This document shows positions 45,450-62,011 of a DNA stretch of 64,000 nucleotides, piece by piece (the first letter of the stretch is position 1; the number at the start of each line of letters is the position of its first letter). Position numbers and translations under genes: made by a program. The notes under the pieces are model-generated. The model was given only the letters and a program-made list of their open reading frames with translations. It made no database searches and was not told the DNA's origin. Origin of the DNA: Adineta vaga (Eukaryota > Animalia > Rotifera); assembly GCA_021613535.1 (NCBI GenBank), contig CP075497.1:12834001-12898000 (forward strand), read 5' to 3'.

Positions 45450-46160
45450 TTTGAAAAAATATTCATCCAGTTCTTTCGTTAGAATAATTAGTAGTAATAT
45501 ATATATGTTTTAAGACAGATCAAAATGATTTTAATCTATCTTACAACATCTACATCAACAGATTTTTTTTCTTTATTCTTCTTCTTCCTTTTCTCCTTTT
45601 TTCGTATCTTTATGTTTTTTCGCTTTAATTTTCTCTCTCTACCATTCATACTATTACATTGCAGCCTACTAACTTATCAATGAATCAATACTGTCATTCC
45701 GTTCTGTTGTTTTTTTTGTAATTCTAACCTTTGCTCCCATATTCCTATCTAAACATAACGGCAAAGAGCAAGTTTTTGGAAAAGAGTTGTCATATAAAAC
45801 AATCAATTAAACAACTTTTACGAGAAATGACCGAAGATTTTTTTCAAAAACAAAACGTTAATTCAAATAGATAAAAATAGCGCACTTAGATTTTACAGTC
45901 TTTTTTCTAAGTACTATAGGTTATTCAAGATCGTCAGTTTTACCAGTTTTTATTTTTCCAGCACATCCACGCACATGCCGAATACAGAAGCAGAACTGGA
46001 AAAAGATTTTTCTTTCTTTCTATTATCAACATGTCGACTCCGGCCTGTCGAGTAGCATGTTTTTCCCTTTCTATGCTCTTTTTTTTCTTCACTACTGACA
46101 TTGATTTCTTTGCAGTATACGGCAGACAGTATATTATCTCCTAGTTATTTCTCCAAGACA

Positions 46161-47719
46161 ATGAATCCTTTCAATTTGATTCAACTACCCAATGAATTAC
46201 TCTATCTTATCTTTCGTTACATGCGTAAATCGGATGTCATCTATGCTTTCTACGAGTTGGATGAACGATTTGCTACTGCTGTACAATTCTTTGTTAGCGA
46301 TTCACTTAATTTGGCAGATGTTTCGCCTCCTGTGAATATTTACATTCTCAGTAAACTCGGTTCTCAAATTCGTCGCCTGGCAATAGGTGGTCGATCGTTC
46401 AATTTTTCGATTGCTCGAGACTGCTTGATAAAATACTGTGCAAATGTGGAAAGGCTTGATATTTTTTGCACAACAACATGCCATGATGTACGTGACTACT
46501 TACAATTTGTTCATTGGGATTTGAAATCTTTTTCAATCATAGATAAGCAAGTAAGATTGAAGTCAAGAAATAATAAATTCTTTCCAAATATGTTTGTGAT
46601 GAAAGTATACACACAAAAGAATAAGTTGAATGAATAGATTTCGAATTACTTCCCAGCTAGAACTCAATAGCAATAAAAATGTTAAAAAATGTGATACTCT
46701 GCTAAGTGAAAGAATATTATAGTTAACCATTTATCTTAGAGAAACTTCACGTAGTCTAGAAAATGTGAAAAACCGTTTCGAGACTTTCGAATTTTAAACA
46801 TACACAAAACCGAACAAAGAGCAATAAAAAAGTATTTTGCCCTCGTCTAAAAATATAAAGGCTTCTTCAGATAAACTAATTCCTAGCTCTATACCTTAAA
46901 GTCTGATGAAAAACCATTGTACAGACATCGGATCTATTATAGTCCTACATTTCTAGAAGGGAGACGGCAGACGGCCGTAACATTTGCATTATCTATGAAA
47001 TAAATCAATGAATTTATGTATTCTTCAACTAGAGACAGCTTTATCCGAACATCGCTACAAATCTTTATTTGCAATCACAAATACAAGTAGCATTCGTCTA
47101 TCGTCGTTTAACATTGCATGTAACAGACTACGAAGCGAATAATATAGCTTTGCTTGACTGGCATCAGCGAAGTGTGGAAATGACTGAAGGACTGTATGAA
47201 ATCGAAAATATCTTTGGACACAAATTTATTATACCCCAACTACAAAATAGTAGAGCTTATGTTGGTGATATTGGGCCTCTTAAAAATCGTATCTTTCGTC
47301 TCGAACACGTCCGATATCGTGAATATCGTTTGCGACACTATCAATCCAACACAATTCTTTGTATTTATCACGAATCATTAAATAATGAAGCACCTCTCGT
47401 ACTCAACACTAATACAGATCAGACATTAACATTCGAAAGTGTTGGTGACAATAATAGTGAGTATTATATTTGGCCTACTCATCAGCGATCAACAAACCGA
47501 AGAAAAGTGCTCGATGTCTACAATGATCCTTATGGTCGTGCTGGACAGAATGGAGCGCAAGTCCAATTGTATAGCTTCCACGGTGGACTCAATCAACGCT
47601 TTCATCTGCGTGCTGTCGACGAAAATAGTCTTGTTTCAACAGACCAGGTCACGAAGAAGACAAAATACAGTAATTGGCTACAAGGATTGTTAAAGAGCAC
47701 TACAAGAAAATTTGATTAA
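46161..47719 (+). CDS. F-box-like protein with C-terminal ricin-B-type lectin domain (~358 aa, 2 exons)
   Basis: Exon 46161-46550 (LIQLPNELLYLIFRYM) with CAA|GTAAGA donor; exon 47033-47719 in frame (VLDVY..NGAQVQLYSFHGGLNQRF). A possible extra 5' mini-exon 46031-46051 splices to 46116. Confidence 0.8.
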
Positions 47720-48544
47720 TGTTATTCGAATTCTTCTATTTCTCTTTTATGTGTATATGTACGCGTATGTGTTTCTTTTATTCTTTTCTTTTGTTGATCG
47801 TTGGTTTTCTTCTCTTTCACTACATGATTTTCTTATATTGAGGGTGTGAATGTACGTCAGAGATGAAGATGTCACCCAGATCTTTTCTCGTAAGGCACGC
47901 ACACCGTCGTGGACCCTCCGAGGGTATGAGTCTGGATAAAGGTACAAGATTGATATATCATCCACATTCATATCCAAAACCACTCCTAAGAAGCAATAAT
48001 TGCTTCCACTTCATGCTATTTTCTTGTGTGATATTCATCAAAAGATGAATGTTTTTCAACAATTTAGTTGCTTAAAATTCTTTCATATAATTAGTTGATG
48101 TTAACACATATATAACAAAACCAAGTAGTTGAGATGTAAAGGATAGAAATACGCTACAAGTAATGCATGTTGCTGCCATCTAACTAGTTCAAGATACGCG
48201 AAAGTAAACAAAAGAATAGTTTGTGGTAATCCGCTTATAGTACAACAAGTAACGCTCATCCTTAGGATTTGCTGACCACTCTCTGAAAGAACTATAATGA
48301 TGATTAACGCATCTATATTATTTAAAAAACTCTCTTAAAGAGAAGAAACACTCGTCAAAATTTCTTTTCTTGATTTTTTGTTTTGATTTTGTTCAGCATC
48401 ATTGAAAACCTCGAGATCCAAATTTTAGCGCATCTGGTTGAACGAAAAAAAATACATCAATTTCACTGACAACCACTCCCAAAACTATTTTGAGATTTCT
48501 TAAAAAATATAGCTAAAAAGAACGCTCATAAAATTTGCAGCTTC

Positions 48545-48666
48545 TGACGGAAATTCTACTGACTGTATCCAATACAGATCCGTCACCAGGAATCCGATAG
48601 GATTTTGTCGGAACGTTGGATCCTATAAGGTCCTATCGGATCCAATATCGGATTTGTCGACCTGGG
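48545..48666. mobile_element. terminal fragment of a MITE-like element
   Basis: Dense tccga/tcgga/ggatcc motifs ending in gacctggg; locally GC-rich. Confidence 0.4.
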
Positions 48667-48857
48667 AAGAGCTTTATGAAATTATTCGTTTAATGTACTA
48701 AAAGATACGGCATCGAAAACTAAACAAAATCCTCTATTTAGATACTCTTTCTGTGGACCGATCGGTACTAGTCGAACATTAGAAATACGTAAATTTGATA
48801 AATATAATGATATTAATTGTTTCTATCTATTCTTTGAAAGAAAAAAAGGAGTGTTCC

Positions 48858-49190
48858 AAAACCTTTTCGGGTTCTGCAACATCTTCAGAACCAGAAAAAG
48901 TTCTGTATGACATATGAGAAACCAAGAAAGGTTCTCGGCAACAATTCTGAGCTAGAAAGGGTTTTGTCCGACAATTCTAAACTATGAAGAGTTCTGTTAG
49001 TTATCCCTTAAACTTCAGAACTTTAAAAAGTTCTGCGTACCAATCCGAAACCATGTAAGCTTATGAACAGGCTTGTAAGAAACCGAAATGGTTCTGCCTA
49101 TTAAATTCCGAACCCTAAACAGTTCTGTTTTATTTATTTCGAACCAAAAGGGTTCTGCCCAAAAATACTCAGTTTGAAAGGGTTCGGTCT
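48858..49190. repeat. ~30-bp-period array of degenerate GAACC-N5/6-GGTTCTG palindromes
   Basis: gttct-like cores near 48872, 48900, 48931, 48961, 48991, 49030, 49090, 49122, 49152 and 49181; a related cluster at 50955-51055. Confidence 0.7.
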
Positions 49191-52100
49191 GATAATATTG
49201 AATCAGAGATTTTTTCCTTCGACGTTACTAAATGTAAAGTTTCTTCTCTAAAATTCGCAACCTGATATAGCTGCCCCAGTGAATGTTAGAGTATCGTAAG
49301 TTTCCTCAACTGAAGAAGAGAGTCACACACTCAAAAAATGTATATACGTTCGTTTGTTCATGCAAGTCAACAACAATTTAACAACTTTCTTTTCCCTTTA
49401 GAGTCTTTTCATAACAAAAAACGGAAATGCTTTGGCCATTTCAAGTTGTCAATAACGATCTTAGGTATGAACTGAACAACTTAATTTTTTGCATCGACGA
49501 TGGTGGGAGTCCACTATCAGTATATGATTATTCCAAGCAATTTTTTAGTCATCCGAATCTGAGGGAGGTTTTTCTCTTATTACTTACATGTAACAAAATC
49601 ATGTTCATGCCAGCTACAAGTTAACAGAGAAAGACTCTAATATAGCTCAAACTAACTTATATGTTATGTCAACAATAGAGGGTAGGAGTTGATCAGCTCA
49701 AGTCCATGAATTTTGATGAAATGAACTAAAGAATTATTCAAAAGTTTATCATTTCACCGAGCACAATCTTTTGAAAATATTCTTTACAAATAAAATGATC
49801 TTTTTCAGCAGTTCATCTATTCGATTATGTAGCGATATCACGCAGTCATCAACTGATAGTATGTATGGGTATTTGTATATCCTTGAGCATAGAAGATATC
49901 TTTATATAATGAGACTAGCAGACAGGGACGGGCTGAGGATTTTATAATACTCGAAAACTTAACTTCAAAGCATGGGTCCTGCATGAAACTTATGAAAGAT
50001 GATAAGTGACCCAAATGGTGACTTTTTACTAAAAACATTTTGTGATTGAAGTTTGCGAAAAAAATTCTTTTAATTGCTACACCCAACTTTTGTTTTTGAT
50101 TTAAGCAGTACTCAGATTCTTAGAATGTTATCGGAATCTACATCGAATTTCATCCACAGATTTCAAGTCTTTCAGAAGCTATCAAGCGATATATTCAATA
50201 GGACTTGTTCAATCCCTCTTTCTATTCGGAGAGCTTTCGAAACTAAATATCAGTCCCTGATAGCAGCAGATATTGAGAAGTTCATAGCTTTTAGCGAGAA
50301 TGTTTATGTTATTATATTTAAAATGAAAAACTAAATATTGTGTTATCATTTAGGTTTGTATAGATATGTGGGTAAAAATGAGTTATTTTCAAAACAATAT
50401 GTTAAATATTTATTGTTATCATTTCGGTTCATAGCCATATCTGATTAAAGTTGAGTGATATTTTGAATTTTAGATTAAAAATTTTTTATTGTCACTTAGA
50501 TTCAGATCGAAGTCTAACGAAATGTGCGAGTTATATTTTATATAGAAAACTAAATATTTTCTTCTTTTATATTTAGATCGATCTATATTGCAGAGAAATG
50601 GTAAGTGGGATATTAGAAACAAAAGTAGAATGATTTTCTTTTTATATCTAGGTTGATTTGTACACGTATGCAAGTACTGCAAGTGCGTCTATTTATATTA
50701 CAAGGTCAAAAACAGACTGAGAAAGTGAATTAGGTTAGGGCTGAATTGAGCCAATCGGCAGCAAGCAAAAAGCGTGATTCGACTGTAGCTTAATTCACTT
50801 TTTCGGTCTATTTGAGAGCTTAACATAAACAGACGCACTTGCAACACTGGAATGTGTGTACAAATCAACCTAGATATAAAGAGAAAATAATTTTCTGAAA
50901 AACCATTTAACACATCTTTTATGTCAGACTGAACCTTATTTTTGTATAGAATAATGAAGAGTTCTGTTAGGTTTTAACAGAACCCTCTATGAGCCAGAAG
51001 CTTTTTGTGGGTTCTGAATTTTACCAGCGGGCCGAATCCCCAAAAAGGTTCTGAAAAACTCCTTTTTTATTTTCAGAGTTGGCTTTCATGCATCTAATAT
51101 CTGATGCGATGAATAAAATTTCAATAGAAGGAAAATGATTGATAAAAAATTGTTCAAAAATATTAACTGCTTCGGATTTGAATTTAAAAGATGCATATGT
51201 CAAATTAATCAACATCATGTCATATAAATTTGGTTGTGTAGGACCATACTGACGTAATAAATTTGCTGATAAATAACGAAATTATGGAACACACGATAAT
51301 AAACAAATCAATTGATTACAATATATTGAATTATCAACGAGTTAATATTCCATTGAGCTATATGAGAAATTCATAATGTATTGTGTATATTTCGGAAAGT
51401 ATAGAGACAATTGATCTCAGATTGTGTCGAAGGAAAATAATATGAAAGTGTTCCACAATAGATTTTTAATGTTGAGAGAATCTGAAATAAAACATAGTTT
51501 CTCGTAATATTAACGTAAGATACGATCAAATGAGAATTAAATAGGTTTCGAAAAAACAGTCGAGTATTCCAGAAGGTCTTCTATTGTAAACATAGATTTA
51601 CATAAATGAATAGACAACATTATTCTATAGAAGAATAAAATAATAGGGATCTATCGAAAGACGATAATGAGAAGGATATATCACATGATGCTTTAAACAA
51701 ATATTACCTTCAAAGACAATGATCAAAAAAGATTAGAACACTTATGATAATTGAATGAAAATAGAGTTGCTCTGATAAATTACTGCTTGTCTATAAATAA
51801 GAAACAAAATGAGTAGAAATATAGATGAGATTTACGAAATGTTCATTTTTTATTTTGTTCTCATTTCGTAAGCCTAAATATGGAAGTTTTTATCTCTTTT
51901 GCCATGAAAGTAGAAAAGAAAAACTTCTTCTACACAAGACATCAAGATTATTATTTGTTTTCATTAGAATTTAAAACATTGAAAAAAGAACGAACAATCA
52001 TATACTCTATAATTTTGGTCAAAATGTATATGTTTTCTGATGGAAGAGAAAGTTTTTATCTGGAAACATCAAGTATTAAAAAATAAAGAAAAAGAAAAAG

Positions 52101-53818
52101 AGTTTATTGAATTTTTTCTATGGATTCAATAATTATTTACCTAATTATGACAATGGATAATATCCGTTTACAATCGATTATTTTAAAATTTACAAGCTTG
52201 TCTTTGAATGACGTTTAATAATGTCTTCATTTTTATCTTGGTTATGATGCAACACTCGTTTGAATTCTCATTGTTTGGATGCTGTGAAATTGTTCAAAGG
52301 TTATAGGTAACTATTAATATATGAATTCGATATTTTTTACAAATATATTTAGAGCATTGCAATCAAAATTGATTAAATCAAACCAATCAAAGTTTATCAT
52401 TAATTTTGTTATCTCTTTCCGACTAATGTTAGATATTATTTGTTAATTCATGTCAGATATAATCCTATCTTTGTTAAAATACCGATATTATATGAAAGAA
52501 AATTTCCATTTAGTGTAAATATGACAATTATATACTTCATCAATATATTCATAGTCAAAAAGTCAGTGATCAATATGTCATTGGTTCAATGAAACAAATG
52601 TCATGATACATGCGTCGATGGTATATTTTAGAAGAATGTTCATCACAATCGATGAATTCAGAAAGGCAGTTCACATTGATTTCTCAAATAAACAAAATCG
52701 CCATATTAGATAAAAAAACTATTTTGGATGTACATTCAACAACTAAATGTTCATTATCATGTGTAATTATTTGAATGCATAGCATGAAAAACTTCGATAG
52801 ATCTAGTATAGTCGGTTTCATCGACACCGATGATGAATATATTCAAAAAGAAATATGTGTAAACTCAAGACAGAACGACTTTACCACTCGCGAATTAATC
52901 ATACTCTTGTAATTCTCAGAATGATAATGAATAGGAAGGGACTATAAGAACGGGTCACTATGTAAACATGAAACACTCTTTGTGTTTACAAATGCATTTC
53001 GCCGTCTTTCATTGACACTCAAGTATATCGGAAGCTGCATCCAGATGCGATTTATATCCTTAATTGTGTCTCTACACATTAGTTAGTTGAGACTGGGATA
53101 CACTCTTTTCTCTAAAACTTTCTTTTTATCTTCAAAGATGTACGAATACAAAACATCTTTCAATCATTAGACATCAAACGTCAAATCAAAGAAGCAACTA
53201 AATAAAGTTGTCAAACTCGTCATACACTTTATCTTGACGTCACCCGCAACTCTCTAACGTTACAAATATAATAACGATTTGTGAGGCACTCAGACTTTAA
53301 ACTAAACTCTCTATTATGAGAAATATTCAAAATAAAGTTCGGAAGAATATTTTGCTACGGTTTCATGCACAACAGAATGTTTAAGAAATGATTTCCCACT
53401 CGTTCCTAATAGATCAGCGATGGGAATAAGTGCAGTGGACCCATTAAAAGGCACATAAGACGCATCAACGGTCGTCCTTCTTCTTCGTAACCTTTCCACT
53501 ATTGAAACATTTTCAGACGACATTATATTAAGAGTAGACAGTTTCACAAAATATCATATGATACCCATCAAACTTCAACTAATAAATTATAGTGCATTTC
53601 TAACACGGGATCTCGCTATCTCGGACATACGCAAATCAACAACTTACATGATAAATACATCTCTTACGGTCGCAAATCAAGAGTTTAAAACAAAACACGT
53701 TATTGTACGATAAATATGACTTCGAAGCACACTGTGTATTTATTTGTCACCACATCGGTTTCCTCTGAAAAAATTCTCCAGAAAAGAGCACTAAAACACA
53801 ATGTCCCGCGAGTCCAAA

Positions 53819-56010
53819 CTACAACGTCAACCTATCTCCAAAAGCATTTCGGAGATACTTTCTTTGCTGCTCGCCGATTAGATTGCCCCGGAGATTTAGT
53901 GCGGTGAGTGTCTATAGAGAAGAGAGAGTATGGATGTGTCAATTAGGACAAGAGCGAATGAGTATTACCGTGTTTATTCGCAAGGCGTCACCAGTATGTT
54001 GTGCTCCTTGATCACCGATTTGATTGTATCGGAGATTTAGTGTGGTGAGTGTCTATAGAGAAGAGAGAGTATGGATGTGTCAATTAGGACAAGAGCGAAT
54101 GAATATTACTGTGTTTATTCGCAAGGCATCACCAATATGTTGTGCTCCTTGATGGCCGATTTGATTGCGTCCGATATCTAGCGTGGTGAGTGTCTATAGA
54201 GGAGAGAGAGCATGGATGTGTCAATTATAGGACAAGAGCGAATGAATATTACTGTGTTTATTCCCAAGGCATCACCAATATGTTGTGCTCCTTGATCACC
54301 GATTTCATTGTATCGGAGATCTAGTGCGGTGAGTGTCTATAGACGAGAGAGAGCATAGATGTGTCAATTAGGACAAGAGCGAATGAATATTACCGTGTTT
54401 GTTCGCAAGGCATCACCAATATGTTGTGCTCCTTGTTCCCCGATTTGATTGTACCGGAGGTTTAGTGTGGTGAGTGTCTATAGACGAGAGAGATAGCATA
54501 AATGTATCAATTAGGTGAAGAGCGAATGAATATTACCGTGTTTGTTCGCAAGGCATCACCAATATGTTGTGCTCCTTGATCACCGATTTGATCGAATCGG
54601 AGATTTAGTGTGGTGAGTGTCTATAGAGGAGAGAGAGCATGGATGTGTCAATTAGGACAAGAGCGAATGAGTATGACTGTGTTTATTCCCAAGGCATCAC
54701 CAATATGTTGTGCTCCTTGATCACCGATCTCATTGTATCGGAGATCTAGTGCGGTGAGTGTCTATAGACGAGAGAGAGCATATATGTGTCAATTAGGACA
54801 AGAGCGAATGAATATTACTGTGTTTGTTCGCAAGGCATCACCAATATGTTGTGCTCCTTGATGGCCGATTTGATTGCCCCGGAGATTTAGTGTGGTGAGT
54901 GTCTATAGAGGAGAGAGAGTATGGATTTGTCAATTAGGACAAGAGCGAATGAGTATTACTGTGTTTGTTCGCAAGGCATCACCAATATGTTGTGCTCCTT
55001 GATCACCGATTTGATTGCGTCCGATATCTAGCGTGGTGAGTGTCTATAGACGAGAGAGAGCATAGATGTGTCAATTAGGACAAGAGCGAATGAATATTAC
55101 TGTGTTTATTCCCAAGGCATCACCAATATGTTGTGCTCCTTGATCGCCGATTTGATTGCGTCCGAGATTTAGTGTGGTGAGTGTCTATGTATAGAATATT
55201 TCTGTCGAGAATGTGGGTAAAGCAATCGGAACTTTAGAGTTATGTTTTTGAATTAGATATAGTATTATACAAGAGGTGTGACGGTAGTGTGGGAAAGTGT
55301 TCGATCTGGGTTCATGGAATGAAAAGAGAAATCGGTGCTTGTCTGATTATTACTGAGTTAATGTTCGAATCGTCGTATGAGTATAGTGAGTATTGTACTG
55401 AAGGTAGTGATACTTGTTTATTTCGAATGGTTTTGGATTGTTATTTTTAGATTTGATTTGCGGAAGATCGTATTGAGTCGGGGCAGAATATGAAACAGTT
55501 CACTTTATTTTATTCGGTTGGTTTCGAAGATAGTTGTTGCATTGTTTAAGAGTTGCAATAGGGACATTTGTTTGAAAAGTGAAAGATGTTTCAATGCTGC
55601 GGTTTTATTCTTGTGCGGCACATGAGTGCGCGTTGAATATGATATATATTATATGTGCATAGATAGAAAAGAACAGGTGAGAGGAAGTGTTGTTTTAATA
55701 GCATGAGTCAATATTGTGTTTGGTTGACTCGTGTGAATTGCTTCGGAATTGTGAAATTTGTTTTTTCTTTGAGTAAACTGATTAAGTTAGATATTGCGAG
55801 GCTCGTGTGTGCTTGAACAGATGAGAAAATAGGTAAAGCACTTTGCAAACTTACTTGATATGGATGATAAATGTTCAGAATGTGATTAAAACGTTGGCAA
55901 ACATTTTGCATTGAGCAAAATAGTGTAAAACCAGACAGATGATCCAAAATTCGATAGACCAGTTCAATCGGTAATGTTGAAAATGTGTGCATATTCGCTT
56001 TAAATTCCAT
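53819..56010 (-). CDS. 11-exon F-box + RI-type (NLRC3-like) LRR protein, ~334 aa
   Basis: Exon 1 56010-55855 (F-box LPIELVYRILDHL..VCQRFNHI). Nine 84-nt phase-0 exons start at 55184, 55043, 54902, 54761, 54620, 54477, 54336, 54193 and 54052. Last exon 53911-53819 ends in TAG. All introns GT-AG, no stops. Confidence 0.93.
53890..55188 (-). repeat. 141-143 bp tandem array = 84-nt LRR exon + 57-59-nt intron
   Basis: gagtgtctat (acceptor junction) recurs ten times at ~141-bp spacing; the introns are nearly identical. Confidence 0.97.
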
Positions 56011-58765
56011 AAAATTTTGTTGAGAATACAAGCTATTGAATATATTCTGTTTGTTATGAAAAGAAATTCGCTTTACTGATAGTATTGTATTATTGTTATT
56101 TGAAAAAGATAATGAAATCTGATGATTTCAACAAAAGCGAATAGCTCGTTTATGCAGAAAGATGGCGTTAACGTATGTATTGAGTGGAGTTTCGTTTGAC
56201 GTGTATGATTATCAGTGTCAGTATACACTCAAGATACGTATTTTTCATCAGTAATTTTTTGAGTTTTACAAAGGAGTTCGTTTTACGAAAGGATATTTTT
56301 GCATGTGATATTCAACAAAAGTTCAATCAGAAAAGGAAATCTTTGAGGGTAGATACCGATACTCTCTACTTTTCACGCTCACGCTTCATACCCTCATAAA
56401 CTAATTTCATTCTATTAGTTCGACGTAAGGCAATTTTTATTTCAAATACGCCTATCCTTAAAGATCTTAACAAGAAAATTAATTGAATTAAAGAAAACAA
56501 AGCCGGTTCATCTTATCGTGATGTGTGAGATAAATTTTTTGTATGAACAATTGCTGGTGTATCAAATATTCTCAAAAGCAAAAGAGAACACATGAAATTA
56601 TAAACTAAGTTCGAGTCTGACTCTCACCGAGTTAACTGACACTGTTGCATGCCTATGCCATCGTATCTCTAAGATGTTCTTATATGATTTGCTTATTCCC
56701 CTACGTTTTTCATTAATTCCAATAGTGTTCAAACTAGACAAATTTAACTGTACTTTATTTTTCTCAAACCTGCTACGGGTTCGATTCTACCTATGTGTTC
56801 ATTTATTGAATTATCATCTCTAGAATGATCAATAGTTTCTATGTAAGTATTGCTAAACTTTTAATGATTTTATGAATAAATAACGACCGACTGATTGTAA
56901 TCTCATATTATATCTATCGAAAGCGCGTACTTACCTCGTACTGAAGGGTAGAGCAATATTTTGATCTTGTGCAGCCTTTAACTTTTAACCCTTGATCCTT
57001 CACATTGATCCCACCTATCTATCATCCTGCCCTTAATCTACTCTCGGTTTCCGATGTTTAAGACAGTCTTAAAAAAAATGGTTTTTCGATCTTTGACACT
57101 GACACAAAAGCGCACAGAAACTTTTTTTCCATATAACGCTCCTTTCTGTGGAAGGAATAAGGTGTGGGTGTAAGTGTTCCTTGACAGAGTACGCACATAC
57201 ATACATCCACACAAGGGGAAAAGGCCGATCCGGGATCCTCATAGTTCCTGCGATCACACAGTTCATGAAGACCAATGATAATCCAAGAGTATCTTTCAGG
57301 ATTCACGAGCGTCAGCCTTTTTGAGATGCCAGGATTTATGGAGAGCCATGAGAGTCCGAACGTTTTATAGGATTTGGGTATCCAGGATCCGCTTTTTCCC
57401 CCTTGCAGACCCACACCCTCAACTTCAACTGAAAAAACATTTCTTCAATGAACCCAGTAGCTTTATTAAAGAATTCACAGTCAGAATTTTTTTGTTTTAT
57501 GCTTAATAACAGGTTATTTTCAGTTTCGCAATAATTATAATAATTGATTAGAATTATGAAAAGCTAACATCAGATTTGAAATCCTCGACTTCGATTACTT
57601 TTGGGTAAATCATATGAAGATGATTATTAGTAAATTTTCATGAATTTTTATATTGCTCCAATCTGACTGGATTAGACAAATAAGAAATAACAATCAATTA
57701 ATTATGATTCATAGAAAAATATTTTTGAGAAAGGAACCCAAGATTCGTATTCCTCGATCTCGATTACATATGACGAATCGTTGTCTGATGACCAGGGGTA
57801 AGTTTTCATCGATTTATACGCTGCTTTCACCTGATTGGCTTGGACAAACAAACAAACTTTAAGCATTTTAACGACCCTATTTAAGAAGCATATAACTCTT
57901 TCTTTCAGAAAAGGGAAAAACGGCTATAGTAATGTGAATTAAGATAAAATGTCAAAAAAGTTTTAAGTTGAAAGATGAAATATGCAGAATTAGAATAAAA
58001 GTGACAGTAAATACTTTTGCAGAGAAATAAATCAAATTACAATATTCTTTACATTATTTTATTTGACAAGTTGACAAAGAAAAATGCGAAGAAATTTAGA
58101 ACAGAAAATAAAAGGGAAATAAGTTTACTGGTATATTAAATTTTAATTTTCTTTAAATGAATTATTCATTAAGATCTAAGTGTATCTATTAAAGTTTATT
58201 TCATCTGAAAGAGATACCAGGCAGAATTTTAATCAAACGATTTATATTCGAATCTCGTACAATCTACCGAGATTAAAGATTCCCATTCGCAAGCGACCAC
58301 CGTATTCACTACTAATACTTTAAAGCTCACATTAAATTGGTGTTCCTCGATCCAAAATACCTTCTAGTCAAGCCTTATAAAAAAATGTTAACAAAAAAAA
58401 TATTCGTTTATATGAAAAATAATGACCTTAAACCGTCTATGACGTCGTATATAGATTTCATATTTATCGACGTTGATAATATTTAAAAATCAAATAAATA
58501 TTTTGTTAATTATCTCGGAGATGGCAGAAAGAAATCTGTGTTGTATCTGTTTATAAGTAACTTATGTACGTCATATAAAAAAAGTCATTCGTTCTTTTAG
58601 CTAAGTAAAATAGAGAAGTTTAATCTTATAAAATATTGTGACGGAGGAGAAAAGAAAAGAGATTGAGAAATAATTTACTATGAACATAGAACTTTCTCTT
58701 CGGATAATAAATTATTATATAAACAAGTTCTTTTTACGTTCAATTATAAAAAATATTAAATTATT

Positions 58766-59758
58766 ATGTCTTCTCTCTCATCCATACAACAAAATATTCT
58801 CCGTTATGTATTTCCTATATCTTTAACATTAGGTAACATCGGAAATATCTTTATAATAATAATCTTTAGTCAAAAACATCATCGAAAAAATTCTTGTTCA
58901 TTATATTTATTAGTTGCTGCGATCTTTAGTATTATTGGAATTAGTTGGGGAATTGGTTCAAATATGTATTCTGCTTATTATCCACCTGATCCATTTACTC
59001 AATCACTTTTTCTTTGTCGTTTTCGAGCTTTTATTTTACAATCTTCAATCCTTATATATAAAATCATGATTTTATTAGCATGTATTGATCGTTTTGCATT
59101 AAGTTCAGCCAATGTGAGAATACGTTCTTTTAGTACACAAAAAGTAGCAATTAAAGTAATTGTTGGAAGTATTCTATTTGGTTTGTCAATATCGATACAT
59201 TTACCACTTAATCAAGACATTCAAAATAATCGATGTTTTGTAATTGGTACATATGGATTATTTTTTAGTATTTATCAAATCTGTATTTATGGTTTAATTT
59301 TGCCAATTGCACAGATCATTTTCGCTCTTCTTATTGCGAAAAATTTAAAAAGAGTTCGTGTTCGTGTACGACCTCAATTACGAGATGAGAATGAATCAGG
59401 AAATGTTCTCTCAACACGTGATGTTACTTTAATCAAACTTGTTTTAGCTGAAATTATCGTTGGTATGATTCTTACGACTTTCTATCCGATCAATAGACTT
59501 TATGCTGTTTTGGCAAGTGATGTACCAAATAGAAGTGCAGATCGTATTGCAATTGAATCATTCTTGGTTTTCATTTGTCTTAATTTTTTATTATATTTAA
59601 ATTATTGTGTTACTTTTTATCTTTATACAGTTATATCGAAAGCTTTTCGTAAAGAAACCAAACGATTTATTCTTGAAATTATCAGACAATCAGACCGAGA
59701 ACATACAAATAGTGTCCCTACCATTCTTGCTCAGCGACGAACAATGAATCCAACTTAA
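58766..59758 (+). CDS. orphan rhodopsin-like GPCR, tandem paralog A
   Basis: 330 aa; GNIGN, RKNSC, CRFR, ACIDRF, SKAFR. Confidence 0.92.
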   Translation: MSSLSSIQQNILRYVFPISLTLGNIGNIFIIIIFSQKHHRKNSCSLYLLVAAIFSIIGISWGIGSNMYSAYYPPDPFTQSLFLCRFRAFILQSSILIYKIMILLACIDRFALSSANVRIRSFSTQKVAIKVIVGSILFGLSISIHLPLNQDIQNNRCFVIGTYGLFFSIYQICIYGLILPIAQIIFALLIAKNLKRVRVRVRPQLRDENESGNVLSTRDVTLIKLVLAEIIVGMILTTFYPINRLYAVLASDVPNRSADRIAIESFLVFICLNFLLYLNYCVTFYLYTVISKAFRKETKRFILEIIRQSDREHTNSVPTILAQRRTMNPT

Positions 59759-61015: not shown

Positions 61016-62011
61016 ATGTCTTCTCTCTCATCTATCCAAGGAGGGATTTTACGTTATGTATTCCCTATATCTTTAACATTAGGCAACATCGGAAATATCT
61101 TTATAATAATAATCTTTAGTCAAAAACATCATCGAAAAAATTCTTGTTCATTATATTTATTAGTTGCTGCGATCTTTAGTATTATTGGAATTAGTTGGGG
61201 AATTGGTTCAAATATGTATTCTGCTTATTATCCACCAGATCCATTTACTCAATCACTTTTTCTTTGTCGTTTTCGTGGTTATATTTTACAATCCTCATCA
61301 CTTATATACAAAATAATGATTTCATTAGCATGTATTGATCGTTTTGCATTAAGTTCAGCCAATGTGAGAATACGTTCTTTTAGTACACAAAAAGTAGCAA
61401 TTAAAGTAATTGTTGGAAGTATTCTATTCGGTTTGTTAATATCAATACATTTACCACTTAATCAAAATACTCAAAATAATCGATGTTTTGTAGTTGGTAC
61501 ATATGGATTATTTTTTAGTATTTATCAAATCTGTATTTTTGGTGTAATTGTACCAATTATACAAATAATTTTCGCTCTTCTTATTGCGAAAAATTTGAAA
61601 AGAGTTCGTATTCGTGTACGACCTCAATTACGAGATGAGAATGAATCAGGAAATGTTCTCTCAACACGTGATGTTACTTTAATCAAACTTGTTTTAGCTG
61701 AAGTTATAATTGGTATTATTCTTACAACTTTCTATCCAATCAATGTACTTTATACTGTATTAGCAAGTTACGTATCGAATAAAAGTGTAGATCGTATTGC
61801 AATTGAAGGATTTTTCTCTTTTTTAATACTTATTGTTTTATTTTATTTGAATTATTGTGTTACTTTTTATATCTATATTGGTATATCAAAAGCTTTTCGT
61901 AAAGAAATCAAACAATTTATCTTTAATACTCTCAAACATTCAGAAAGACAACAAACAAATACGATTTCTACTGTAGTCGCTCAACGACGACAAAGAAATA
62001 CTGCTGTATAA
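61016..62011 (+). CDS. orphan rhodopsin-like GPCR, tandem paralog B
   Basis: 331 aa; long tracts identical to 58766-59758. Confidence 0.92.
   Translation: MSSLSSIQGGILRYVFPISLTLGNIGNIFIIIIFSQKHHRKNSCSLYLLVAAIFSIIGISWGIGSNMYSAYYPPDPFTQSLFLCRFRGYILQSSSLIYKIMISLACIDRFALSSANVRIRSFSTQKVAIKVIVGSILFGLLISIHLPLNQNTQNNRCFVVGTYGLFFSIYQICIFGVIVPIIQIIFALLIAKNLKRVRIRVRPQLRDENESGNVLSTRDVTLIKLVLAEVIIGIILTTFYPINVLYTVLASYVSNKSVDRIAIEGFFSFLILIVLFYLNYCVTFYIYIGISKAFRKEIKQFIFNTLKHSERQQTNTISTVVAQRRQRNTAV

What the first reader, a model, noticed from the sequence alone, without database searches (positions are those of the whole stretch)
53819..56010. Apparent satellite is a hidden F-box/LRR gene built from exon+intron cassettes
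Seen: the 141-bp tandem array, whose exons are absent from the ORF track, splices on the minus strand into nine 84-nt phase-0 exons, each one 28-aa RI-type LRR (consensus TLTTLNLRxNQIGDQGAQHIGDALRxNT). They lie between an F-box exon and a capping exon, and every frame and splice site is intact. Introns are about as homogeneous as exons, so the whole cassette is the unit of duplication. Known: F-box proteins are SCF substrate receptors, and one-LRR-per-exon shuffling is described for brown-algal LRR-ROCO genes. Inference: a modular receptor whose repeat number and order can change by unequal crossover or exon skipping without frameshift, i.e. a candidate diversifying intracellular recognition system.
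Basis: partly seen in the sequence, partly recalled or inferred. Interest (0 to 1): 0.85.

Follow-up and report, generated by a model that had tools for sequence, protein, structure and literature searches.

The report
Rotifer F-box gene with LRR cassettes
The apparent 141-bp satellite is the repeat domain of an intact Adineta vaga gene that joins a ubiquitin-ligase docking (F-box) exon to nine one-exon leucine-rich repeats. It is one of at least 26 fast-diversifying copies carried on a dispersed 9.7-kb repeat, so it is a candidate germline repertoire of degradation receptors rather than a unique or self-rearranging locus.

Summary
On the minus strand, an F-box exon (55855-56010) is followed by a 670-nt intron and nine 84-nt phase-0 exons. 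Each of these encodes one 28-residue RI-type LRR, and they are separated by 57-59-nt GT..AG introns. A capping exon ends at the stop codon (53819). All frames and splice sites are intact.

The genome is Adineta vaga. The gene is one of at least 26 close paralogues with 1-23 cassettes. Each sits in a ~9.7-kb dispersed unit with sharp ends (window 57920 to ~48244), and the copies are enriched near chromosome ends.

RNA-like contigs stop exactly at the predicted exon borders and run on into the next exon, so the family is spliced as modelled. Expression of this particular copy is not shown.

Framework codons are under purifying selection (pN/pS 0.21). Repeat positions 8, 9 and 11 change 2-4.7 times faster than synonymous or intron sites. 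This copy is a recombinant: it has no differences from a chromosome-2 copy over 906 nt up to about position 55540, then diverges.

Nothing shows exon skipping or rearrangement within an animal. The scan found this family before on other DNA of this genome. I class it as a new variant of a known kind (expanded, positively selected F-box receptor families; exon-per-LRR shuffling).

The parts
57750..57920 (-). gene-5' terminus of the ~9.7-kb dispersed unit; homology to the other copies starts sharply at 57920 and flanks are unrelated; holds a short palindrome (CCCTTT..AAAGGG)
56011..57749 (-). upstream part of the unit (presumed promoter and 5'UTR); 91-99% identical to most close copies (four older ones 84-87%); no Pfam-recognisable ORF
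55855..56010 (-). exon 1, F-box (52 codons; conserved start probably Met7 at 55990-55992); donor GTAAGT at 55849-55854
   Evidence: pN/pS 0.22 among copies; RNA joint at 55855
55185..55854 (-). intron 1, 670 nt; length 666-670 in 20 of 21 copies; the read-through frame shows no coding constraint; recombination breakpoint against the chromosome-2 copy at about 55540
55101..55184 (-). LRR exon 1 (84 nt, phase 0)
54960..55043 (-). LRR exon 2
54819..54902 (-). LRR exon 3
54678..54761 (-). LRR exon 4
54537..54620 (-). LRR exon 5
54394..54477 (-). LRR exon 6 (97.9% identical, with its intron, to cassette 10 of the copy at C6:12.11 Mb)
54253..54336 (-). LRR exon 7 (99% identical to exon 4)
54110..54193 (-). 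LRR exon 8
53969..54052 (-). LRR exon 9
53819..53911 (-). capping exon: a degenerate tenth LRR plus a conserved tail, stop TAG at 53819-53821
53739..53744 (-). AATAAA, candidate polyadenylation signal 75 nt after the stop
   Evidence: read
48244..53818 (-). 3' part of the dispersed unit; homology to the other copies ends sharply at about 48244; no recognisable gene; holds a 72-nt inverted repeat and a nested ~163-nt small repeat

Best explanation
This is an intact member of a bdelloid-rotifer family of F-box proteins whose substrate-binding domain is an RI-type LRR solenoid encoded one repeat per exon. Most likely mechanism: the F-box docks on Skp1 in an SCF ubiquitin ligase, and the concave LRR face binds target proteins and marks them for degradation. 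That face carries the hypervariable positions 6, 8, 9, 11 and 14 of each 28-residue repeat. Diversity is encoded in the germline and arises in four ways: (1) copying of a ~9.7-kb transposon-like unit to new, mostly subtelomeric sites; (2) gain and loss of 141-bp exon+intron cassettes by unequal recombination, which cannot shift the frame because every exon is 84 nt and phase 0; (3) ectopic recombination or gene conversion between copies; (4) positive selection on the binding-face codons. Shown here: gene structure, family, splicing at family level, selection pattern, variation in cassette number, the recombinant nature of this copy, and the dispersed unit. Inferred: Skp1 binding, substrate degradation, and the nature of the targets (possibly foreign or selfish proteins).
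For: Structure and domains. Family: the F-box exon has 149 matches in the genome. Of these, 26 are at least 86% identical, and every one checked lies about 0.7 kb upstream of a cassette array on the same strand. Cassette counts are 1-23, the donor is GTAAGT in 21 of 21 copies, and the capping exon is full length and ends at the family's stop in 16 of 21. Splicing: RNA-like contigs of runs X17 and X18 end at 54110, 54537 and 54902 and continue into the start or end of the neighbouring exon. A contig joins 55855 (the F-box donor) to an LRR exon start with CT..AC ends, and intron 1 is empty in X18. Public gene models in A. steineri and A. ricciae join the F-box directly to 28-residue LRRs. The A. 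steineri gene has the same plan: an F-box exon, a 612-nt intron, then 84-nt exons with 49-51-nt introns. Selection: entropy is 2.1-2.95 bits at positions 8, 9 and 11 and near 0 at framework positions. pN/pS is 0.21 for framework codons and 1.8 for hypervariable codons, and intron divergence is about equal to pS. Tree-based counts put codons 8, 9 and 11 at 2.1-3.6 times the synonymous rate and 2.8-4.7 times the intron rate, significant after Bonferroni correction. The F-box exon has pN/pS 0.22. Fold: an AlphaFold model of an A. ricciae homologue gives one strand plus one helix per 28 residues at pLDDT 82-97. Its best structural matches are axonemal RI-type LRR proteins, NOD2, NLRP and ribonuclease inhibitor. 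Recombination. Dispersed unit and subtelomeric bias.
Against: No RNA contig is specific to this copy. The RNA contigs over the F-box exon carry the majority paralogue variants, and the only reference-type contig at the donor is unspliced. No RNA contig covers this copy's capping exon or 3'UTR at 95% identity. Skp1 binding is untested, and the F-box part of the model is poorly predicted (pLDDT 34-58). The hypervariable codons were chosen after seeing the data; one search tests all 28 codons to offset this. Gene conversion among cassettes inflates all change counts, though this should affect synonymous and non-synonymous counts alike. Targets are unknown.
Confidence: 0.6

Rival explanations
1. 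The gene serves the mobile unit rather than the host. It would be a cargo F-box-LRR protein that hijacks the host SCF ligase to remove host factors restricting the element, as viral and bacterial F-box proteins do.
For: It is the only recognisable gene in a 9.7-kb unit with sharp ends and unrelated flanks. There are dozens of copies, whereas 96% of canonical TE consensus sequences in this genome are present in fewer than six copies (PMC8494291). The LRR profile's best solved match is a bacterial F-box effector LRR domain, RipG4/GALA.
Against: No transposase, Rep/helicase or reverse transcriptase is present in the unit, and no target-site duplication or terminal repeat was found. The same F-box + LRR exon plan occurs in other bdelloid species, and the LRR module is also fused to other host-type domains. 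Diversifying selection across copies fits a host repertoire at least as well.
Confidence: 0.15
2. This copy is a recently made, silent duplicate. It looks intact only because too little time has passed for it to decay.
For: No copy-specific RNA contig was found. The unit is only 4-9% diverged from its relatives. Five of 21 copies already have a truncated, read-through or lost capping exon (L021, L030, L031, L032, L040), and L030 also has a stop at codon 4, upstream of the conserved start.
Against: All eleven exons, ten splice-site pairs and the stop codon are intact. Family-wide purifying selection on framework codons and on the F-box shows that most copies have been under constraint. Contigs drop rare variants, so absence of RNA evidence here is weak.
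Confidence: 0.2
3. Diversity is generated within the animal, by regulated exon skipping or somatic rearrangement of cassettes, as in lamprey VLR genes.
For: All LRR exons are symmetric and phase 0, so any subset can be skipped in frame. Two RNA joints look like skipping: exon 6 to exon 9, and exon 2 to the capping exon.
Against: Those joints have 24-nt anchors in sequence repeated about 400 times in the genome, and they may come from paralogues. No DNA evidence of rearrangement was found. Germline paralogue diversity already explains the variation.
Confidence: 0.04

Closest known systems
FBXL-type SCF substrate receptors (for example Skp2, FBXL proteins)
   Same: An N-terminal F-box is followed directly by an LRR solenoid, and Pfam F-box and LRR_6 both match.
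   Different: Classical FBXL repeats are the 26-residue cysteine-containing type (my knowledge of LRR classes). Here the repeats are 28-residue RI-type, and the structural matches are to axonemal LRR proteins, NOD2, NLRP and ribonuclease inhibitor. Other differences are the one-repeat-per-exon plan, the multicopy family and the hypervariable face.
Expanded, positively selected F-box families of Caenorhabditis (and plants)
   Same: These are large lineage-specific F-box families with strong positive selection in the substrate-recognition part, proposed to act in immunity (PMC8120010 and PMC8665587, titles and abstracts).
   Different: To my knowledge the expanded nematode families mostly use FTH/FBA-type recognition domains rather than LRR cassettes. 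No exon+intron cassette arrays and no carriage on a defined dispersed unit are described there.
Ectocarpus LRR-ROCO genes (exon shuffling)
   Same: Each LRR is encoded by one exon whose length is a multiple of three. Exon number is variable, and positive selection acts on concave-face residues (PMC3341825).
   Different: In the alga the exons are 72 nt (24 residues), of the plant-specific type, and joined to a ROC-COR GTPase. Here they are 84 nt, RI-type, joined to an F-box, with 57-nt introns duplicated along with the exons, in an animal.
Ralstonia GALA/RipG F-box-LRR type III effectors
   Same: Both have an F-box plus LRRs with a nearly identical strand-and-loop motif. The exon profile hits the RipG4 LRR domain 9j7j at E = 1.4e-27, and the A. 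ricciae homologue model aligns to it at 40% identity.
   Different: GALA repeats have a 24-residue period (spacing of the matches) against 28 here. GALA proteins are bacterial and intronless. Homology of the F-box parts was not tested, and the resemblance may reflect a shared RI-like consensus.
Ribonuclease inhibitor and NLR LRR domains
   Same: They share the same alpha/beta horseshoe fold. NOD2 aligns at TM 0.73 and rmsd 1.3 A, and RI at TM 0.74. To my knowledge their LRR exons are also modular.
   Different: There is no NACHT domain or other signalling domain. The effector end here is an F-box.
Lamprey VLR genes
   Same: They are LRR cassette collections that yield variable binding faces.
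   Different: VLRs are assembled somatically from flanking cassettes. Here all diversity seen is germline paralogue diversity.

Membership tests
F-box proteins (SCF substrate receptors) | F-box domain recognised by the family profile | tested here: met
   PF00646 scores 22.4 bits against a cut-off of 20.5, covering residues 10-46 of exon 1. The LP..E...Y.RI..D/H.. core is conserved in 42 relatives. pN/pS is 0.22.
F-box proteins (SCF substrate receptors) | Binds Skp1 | tested here: inconclusive
   Eight Skp1-domain matches exist in the genome. The complex prediction gave no verdict and counts neither for nor against binding.
RI-type (ribonuclease-inhibitor-like) LRR | 28-29-residue period with the LxxLxLxxN core, one short strand and one helix per repeat | tested here: met
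   The 28-residue period is exact in nine exons. LRR_6 matches. The homologue model shows a strand-plus-helix unit every 28 residues, and its top structural matches include NOD2, NLRP and RI. The fold was modelled on an A. ricciae relative, not on this protein.
GALA-LRR (Ralstonia RipG) | 24-residue repeat period | tested here: not met
   Matches in 9j7j are spaced 24 residues apart and align only to positions 1-18 of the 28-position profile.
Exon-shuffled LRR cassette genes (Ectocarpus ROCO type) | One LRR per symmetric phase-0 exon, variable exon number among paralogues, inactivated exons present | tested here: met
   The exons are 84 nt and phase 0. There are 1-23 cassettes per copy, with gaps or broken cassettes in L022, L028 and L039.
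Helitron transposons | 5'-TC and 3'-CTRR termini with a 3' hairpin, insertion at AT, and a Rep/helicase in autonomous copies | tested here: not met
   The termini read TTATTCCC... and ...ACTTGT. The only palindrome is at the gene-5' end. None of the 24 Helitron_like_N matches lies next to a copy of the unit's terminus. The class of the unit stays open.
Transposable element (any class) | Dispersed copies with identical sharp ends in unrelated flanks | tested here: met
   Ten 5' ends and eight 3' ends were aligned.
Transposable element (any class) | Target-site duplication or an empty site | tested here: inconclusive
   Short shared strings lie near both ends in three of four copies, but at inconsistent offsets. 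No empty site exists in this haploid assembly.
Somatically diversified LRR receptors (VLR-like) | Rearranged or alternatively assembled cassettes within one individual | not testable with these tools
   Only contigs of public runs were available, and the joints are ambiguous.

The most novel reading that the evidence does not exclude
A transposon-like unit has seeded the chromosome ends of an ancient asexual animal with dozens of F-box-LRR genes. Their cassette arrays are reshuffled by ectopic recombination and selected for new binding faces. On this reading they form a germline, ubiquitin-ligase-based repertoire for recognising foreign or selfish proteins, built on the same logic as LRR immune receptors but with direct degradation as the output.
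Probability: 0.3. Interest if true: 0.75.

Novelty: new variant of a known kind. Interest (0 to 1): 0.55.

Why it matters
Bdelloid rotifers survive without conventional sex, take up much foreign DNA and face specialised fungal parasites, yet little is known about how they recognise non-self. A family of dozens of ubiquitin-ligase receptors with a binding face evolving two to five times faster than neutral DNA is a concrete candidate for such recognition. Its repeat number ranges from 1 to 23, and its copies exchange segments between chromosomes. It also offers a clean natural example of frame-safe exon+intron cassette duplication, and a sensitive marker of ectopic recombination in an asexual genome. 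The proper gene models seem to be missing or wrong in the public A. vaga annotation: one model ends with the F-box exon, and another reads through intron 1. Re-annotation is therefore needed before expression studies.

Tried and rejected
1. Complex prediction of the F-box exon with the Skp1 exon (L051:1336-1611) gave no verdict. It is not used as evidence either way.

2. The exhaustive protein search with the 52-residue F-box exon returned mostly short ORF fragments. Only P0100, P0139, P0012 and the cluster mate P0273 were useful.

3. Helitron reading: the termini are not canonical and no Rep/helicase is adjacent.

4. No terminal inverted or long terminal repeats link the unit's two ends. The target-site duplication is unresolved.

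5. Other ORFs of the unit have no Pfam match. There are no Rfam families in 48000-58100.

6. An extended first exon, as in GenBank model ADD91459.1, is rejected. The read-through frame has pN/pS 0.68, like the other frames, and has stops in three copies. The RNA joint lies at the GTAAGT donor.

7. The 'exon-skipping' joints are rejected as evidence (24-nt anchors in repeats).

The family statistics therefore rest on 21 copies.

9. Literature searches for bdelloid or Adineta F-box/LRR work found no paper on this family.

10. The spliced protein was never joined. Exons were searched one by one by reference, so no search, fold or complex used the full-length product of this gene. The fold comes from a public A. 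ricciae relative.

Full report
OBSERVATION

The region 53874-55188 is a 141-bp tandem array (9.3 copies, 89% matches, no indels). Read on the minus strand, it resolves into nine units of AG | 84 nt | GT. All nine are open in the same frame, and each encodes a 28-residue leucine-rich repeat. The introns between them are 57 nt (seven cases) or 59 nt (two cases). They have a GTAATA-type donor, a CTAAT branch-like motif, a pyrimidine run and a TAG acceptor.

Upstream lies an exon of 52 codons (55855-56010) that passes the Pfam F-box threshold. It ends at a GTAAGT donor and is followed by a 670-nt intron. Downstream, a capping exon (53819-53911) ends in TAG, with an AATAAA 75 nt further on. Mean pairwise identity is 90.2% for exons and 91.3% for introns. 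The only corrections concern the length of exon 1 and the probable start codon (Met7), because the first ATG is GTG in 19 of 21 copies.

ORGANISM AND FAMILY

The genome has 100.8 Mb in six contigs. A protein found in the searches, I4U23_021784 of Adineta vaga, lies on a contig of 15,224,634 bases, exactly the length of contig 4. This fits the six-chromosome AV20 assembly (PMC8494291).

The cassette has more than 400 in-register matches at some twenty loci. The F-box exon has 149 matches. Of these, 26 are at least 86% identical, and every one I could check lies about 0.7 kb upstream of a cassette array on the same strand.

In 21 copies examined (this one plus L021-L040), the donor is GTAAGT in all. 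Intron 1 is 666-670 nt in 20. The array holds 1 to 23 cassettes. The capping exon is full length and ends at the family's stop in 16; it is truncated, read through or lost in L021, L030, L031, L032 and L040.

SPLICING

I laid contigs of four public runs on 53500-56300. Run X11 covers exons, introns and flanks alike and behaves as DNA.

Runs X17 and X18 behave as RNA. Their pieces end at exon borders (54110, 54537, 54902/3). The loose letters beyond those ends are the start or the end of a neighbouring exon, with no intron between. X18 has no depth over intron 1. One X18 contig joins 55855, the last base of the F-box exon, to the first base of an LRR exon, with CT..AC ends.

These contigs carry the majority paralogue variants, so they show splicing of the family, not of this copy. 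No RNA contig covers this copy's capping exon or 3'UTR.

Independent support comes from public gene models. A. steineri P0100 and P0139 and A. ricciae P0170 and P0202 join the F-box directly to 28-residue repeats. The P0100 gene has the same plan on its contig: an F-box exon, a 612-nt intron, then exons of 84 nt (one of 87 nt) with 49-51-nt introns.

An older A. vaga GenBank model (ADD91459.1, P0273) splices the LRR exons in the same way but reads through the first donor. That extension shows no coding constraint.

SELECTION

I analysed 267 LRR exons (211 distinct peptides). Entropy is near zero at the framework positions. It reaches 2.6, 2.95 and 2.1 bits at positions 8, 9 and 11, and 1.3-1.5 bits at positions 6 and 14.

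Pairwise estimates give pN/pS 0.21 for framework codons and about 1.8 for the five most variable codons. Intron divergence (0.095 within arrays, 0.155 between loci) is close to pS.

Counting changes on a tree of 188 distinct cassettes, with all 28 codons tested, gives non-synonymous rates at codons 8, 9 and 11 of 2.1-3.6 times the synonymous rate and 2.8-4.7 times the intron rate. This is significant after Bonferroni correction.

Third codon positions and introns have the same per-site entropy (0.36-0.38). First and second positions of framework codons have about half of it. The F-box exon has pN/pS 0.22.

The array is thus coding sequence under constraint, with a fast-evolving patch. The homogeneity of the introns simply reflects the youth of the duplications.

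An AlphaFold model of the A. ricciae relative P0170:1-216 gives one short strand and one helix per 28 residues at pLDDT 82-97. It places positions 4-6 in the strand and positions 8-11 in the loop that follows. Its best structural matches are axonemal RI-type LRR proteins, NOD2, NLRP proteins and ribonuclease inhibitor.

ARRAY DYNAMICS

73% of cassettes have their nearest relative in their own array, and the rest have it in another locus. This copy is a recombinant. Against the copy on contig 2 (15.72 Mb) it is 99% identical over 1.9 kb upstream, with no difference at all from 56447 to 55541. It then differs about every 10 nt from 55540 on. Its 3' part is closest to two copies on its own chromosome at 11.99 and 12.11 Mb. 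Cassettes 6 and 9 have near-twins (96.5-97.9%) in the latter copy. Repeat number, order and gene halves are therefore exchanged in the germline.

THE DISPERSED UNIT

Homology among copies does not stop at the gene. It begins sharply at window 57920 and ends sharply at about 48244, with unrelated flanks in every copy aligned. The unit is about 9.7 kb here.

Its other ORFs have no Pfam match, and it holds no Rfam family. There are no terminal inverted or direct repeats. Its termini are not the canonical Helitron ones, and none of the 24 Helitron-type Rep matches of the genome lies beside a copy of its terminus. I could not settle a target-site duplication.

Twenty of the 26 closest copies lie within 2.5 Mb of a chromosome end, against 30% expected (p about 1e-6). 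This matches the published picture of dynamic subtelomeres. According to the same paper, 96% of canonical TE consensus sequences in that genome are present in fewer than six copies (PMC8494291).

COMPARISON WITH KNOWN SYSTEMS

The architecture is that of an FBXL-type SCF receptor, but with RI-type repeats. Large, positively selected F-box families are known in Caenorhabditis. One-LRR-per-exon shuffling with positive selection on the concave face is known in Ectocarpus ROCO genes (PMC3341825).

The profile of the ten exons finds the LRR domain of the Ralstonia F-box effector RipG4 (GALA) as by far the best solved match (E = 1.4e-27). However, that protein has a 24-residue period and matches only the first 18 positions.

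In bdelloids the same LRR module is also joined to RING/B-box, U-box-kinase and ADP-ribosyltransferase domains. Similar repeats occur in Mortierella-like fungi, in Capsaspora and in intracellular bacteria. I found no paper on this rotifer family.

Earlier notes of this scan describe other copies of the same family on other pieces of this genome and reach similar conclusions. My results were obtained independently of them, except that I tested, and could not confirm, the Helitron label.

MECHANISM AND LIMITS

Shown:
- an intact gene;
- a multicopy family;
- splicing at family level;
- purifying selection on the scaffold and the F-box;
- faster-than-neutral change at three binding-face positions;
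- germline change of cassette number;
- inter-copy recombination;
- carriage on a dispersed unit.

Inferred:
- docking on Skp1;
- ubiquitination of bound targets;
- that the targets are variable (foreign or selfish) proteins.

Not shown:
- expression of this copy;
- any exon skipping;
- any diversification within an animal.

The spliced protein was never joined. Exons were handled one by one by reference, so no search, fold or complex used the full-length product. The comparison with RipG4 was descriptive only.

Noticed in passing
window 58766-59758 and 61016-62011 (+): Two intron-free tandem paralogues of 330 and 331 residues with a weak rhodopsin-type 7TM match (below the Pfam cut-off). They lie just outside the unit's 5' end.
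   Followed up: partly
window 46101-46637 (+) and 47069-47719 (+): Just beyond the unit's 3' end lie an ORF with a weak F-box-like_2 match (a different F-box family) and an ORF with a ricin-type beta-trefoil lectin domain above the cut-off.
   Followed up: partly
window about 48504-48666: A ~163-nt piece inside the unit's 3' part also occurs alone at several other loci at 93-98% identity (query positions 2834-2996). It is probably a small nested mobile element.
   Followed up: no
window 50629-50700 / 50821-50892: A 72-nt inverted repeat, 86% complementary, with 120 nt between the arms, lies inside the unit. The same region matches itself on the opposite strand in many copies.
   Followed up: no
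window about 57290-57345: A ~56-nt segment of the upstream region is present in this copy and seven others but absent from about a dozen copies (split matches 581-1155 / 1212-2490).
   Followed up: no
genome-wide: The first ~170 nt of the unit also occur at some 15 further loci at 78-92% identity, apparently without the F-box gene. One lies 5.4 kb beyond the window's end (C6:12903382). These could be older or different elements sharing the terminus.
   Followed up: partly
public proteins P0152, P0156, P0189, P0190, P0201: In bdelloids the same RI-type LRR module is annotated in fusion with B-box/RING, ADP-ribosyltransferase and kinase+U-box domains. This suggests a wider set of LRR-guided modifying enzymes, though some fusions may be gene-model artefacts.
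   Followed up: no
public A. vaga annotation: The GenBank model I4U23_021784 ends with a family F-box exon fused to unrelated upstream sequence. No properly spliced A. vaga model of the family appeared among the hits, so these genes seem to be mis-annotated or unannotated in AV20.
   Followed up: partly
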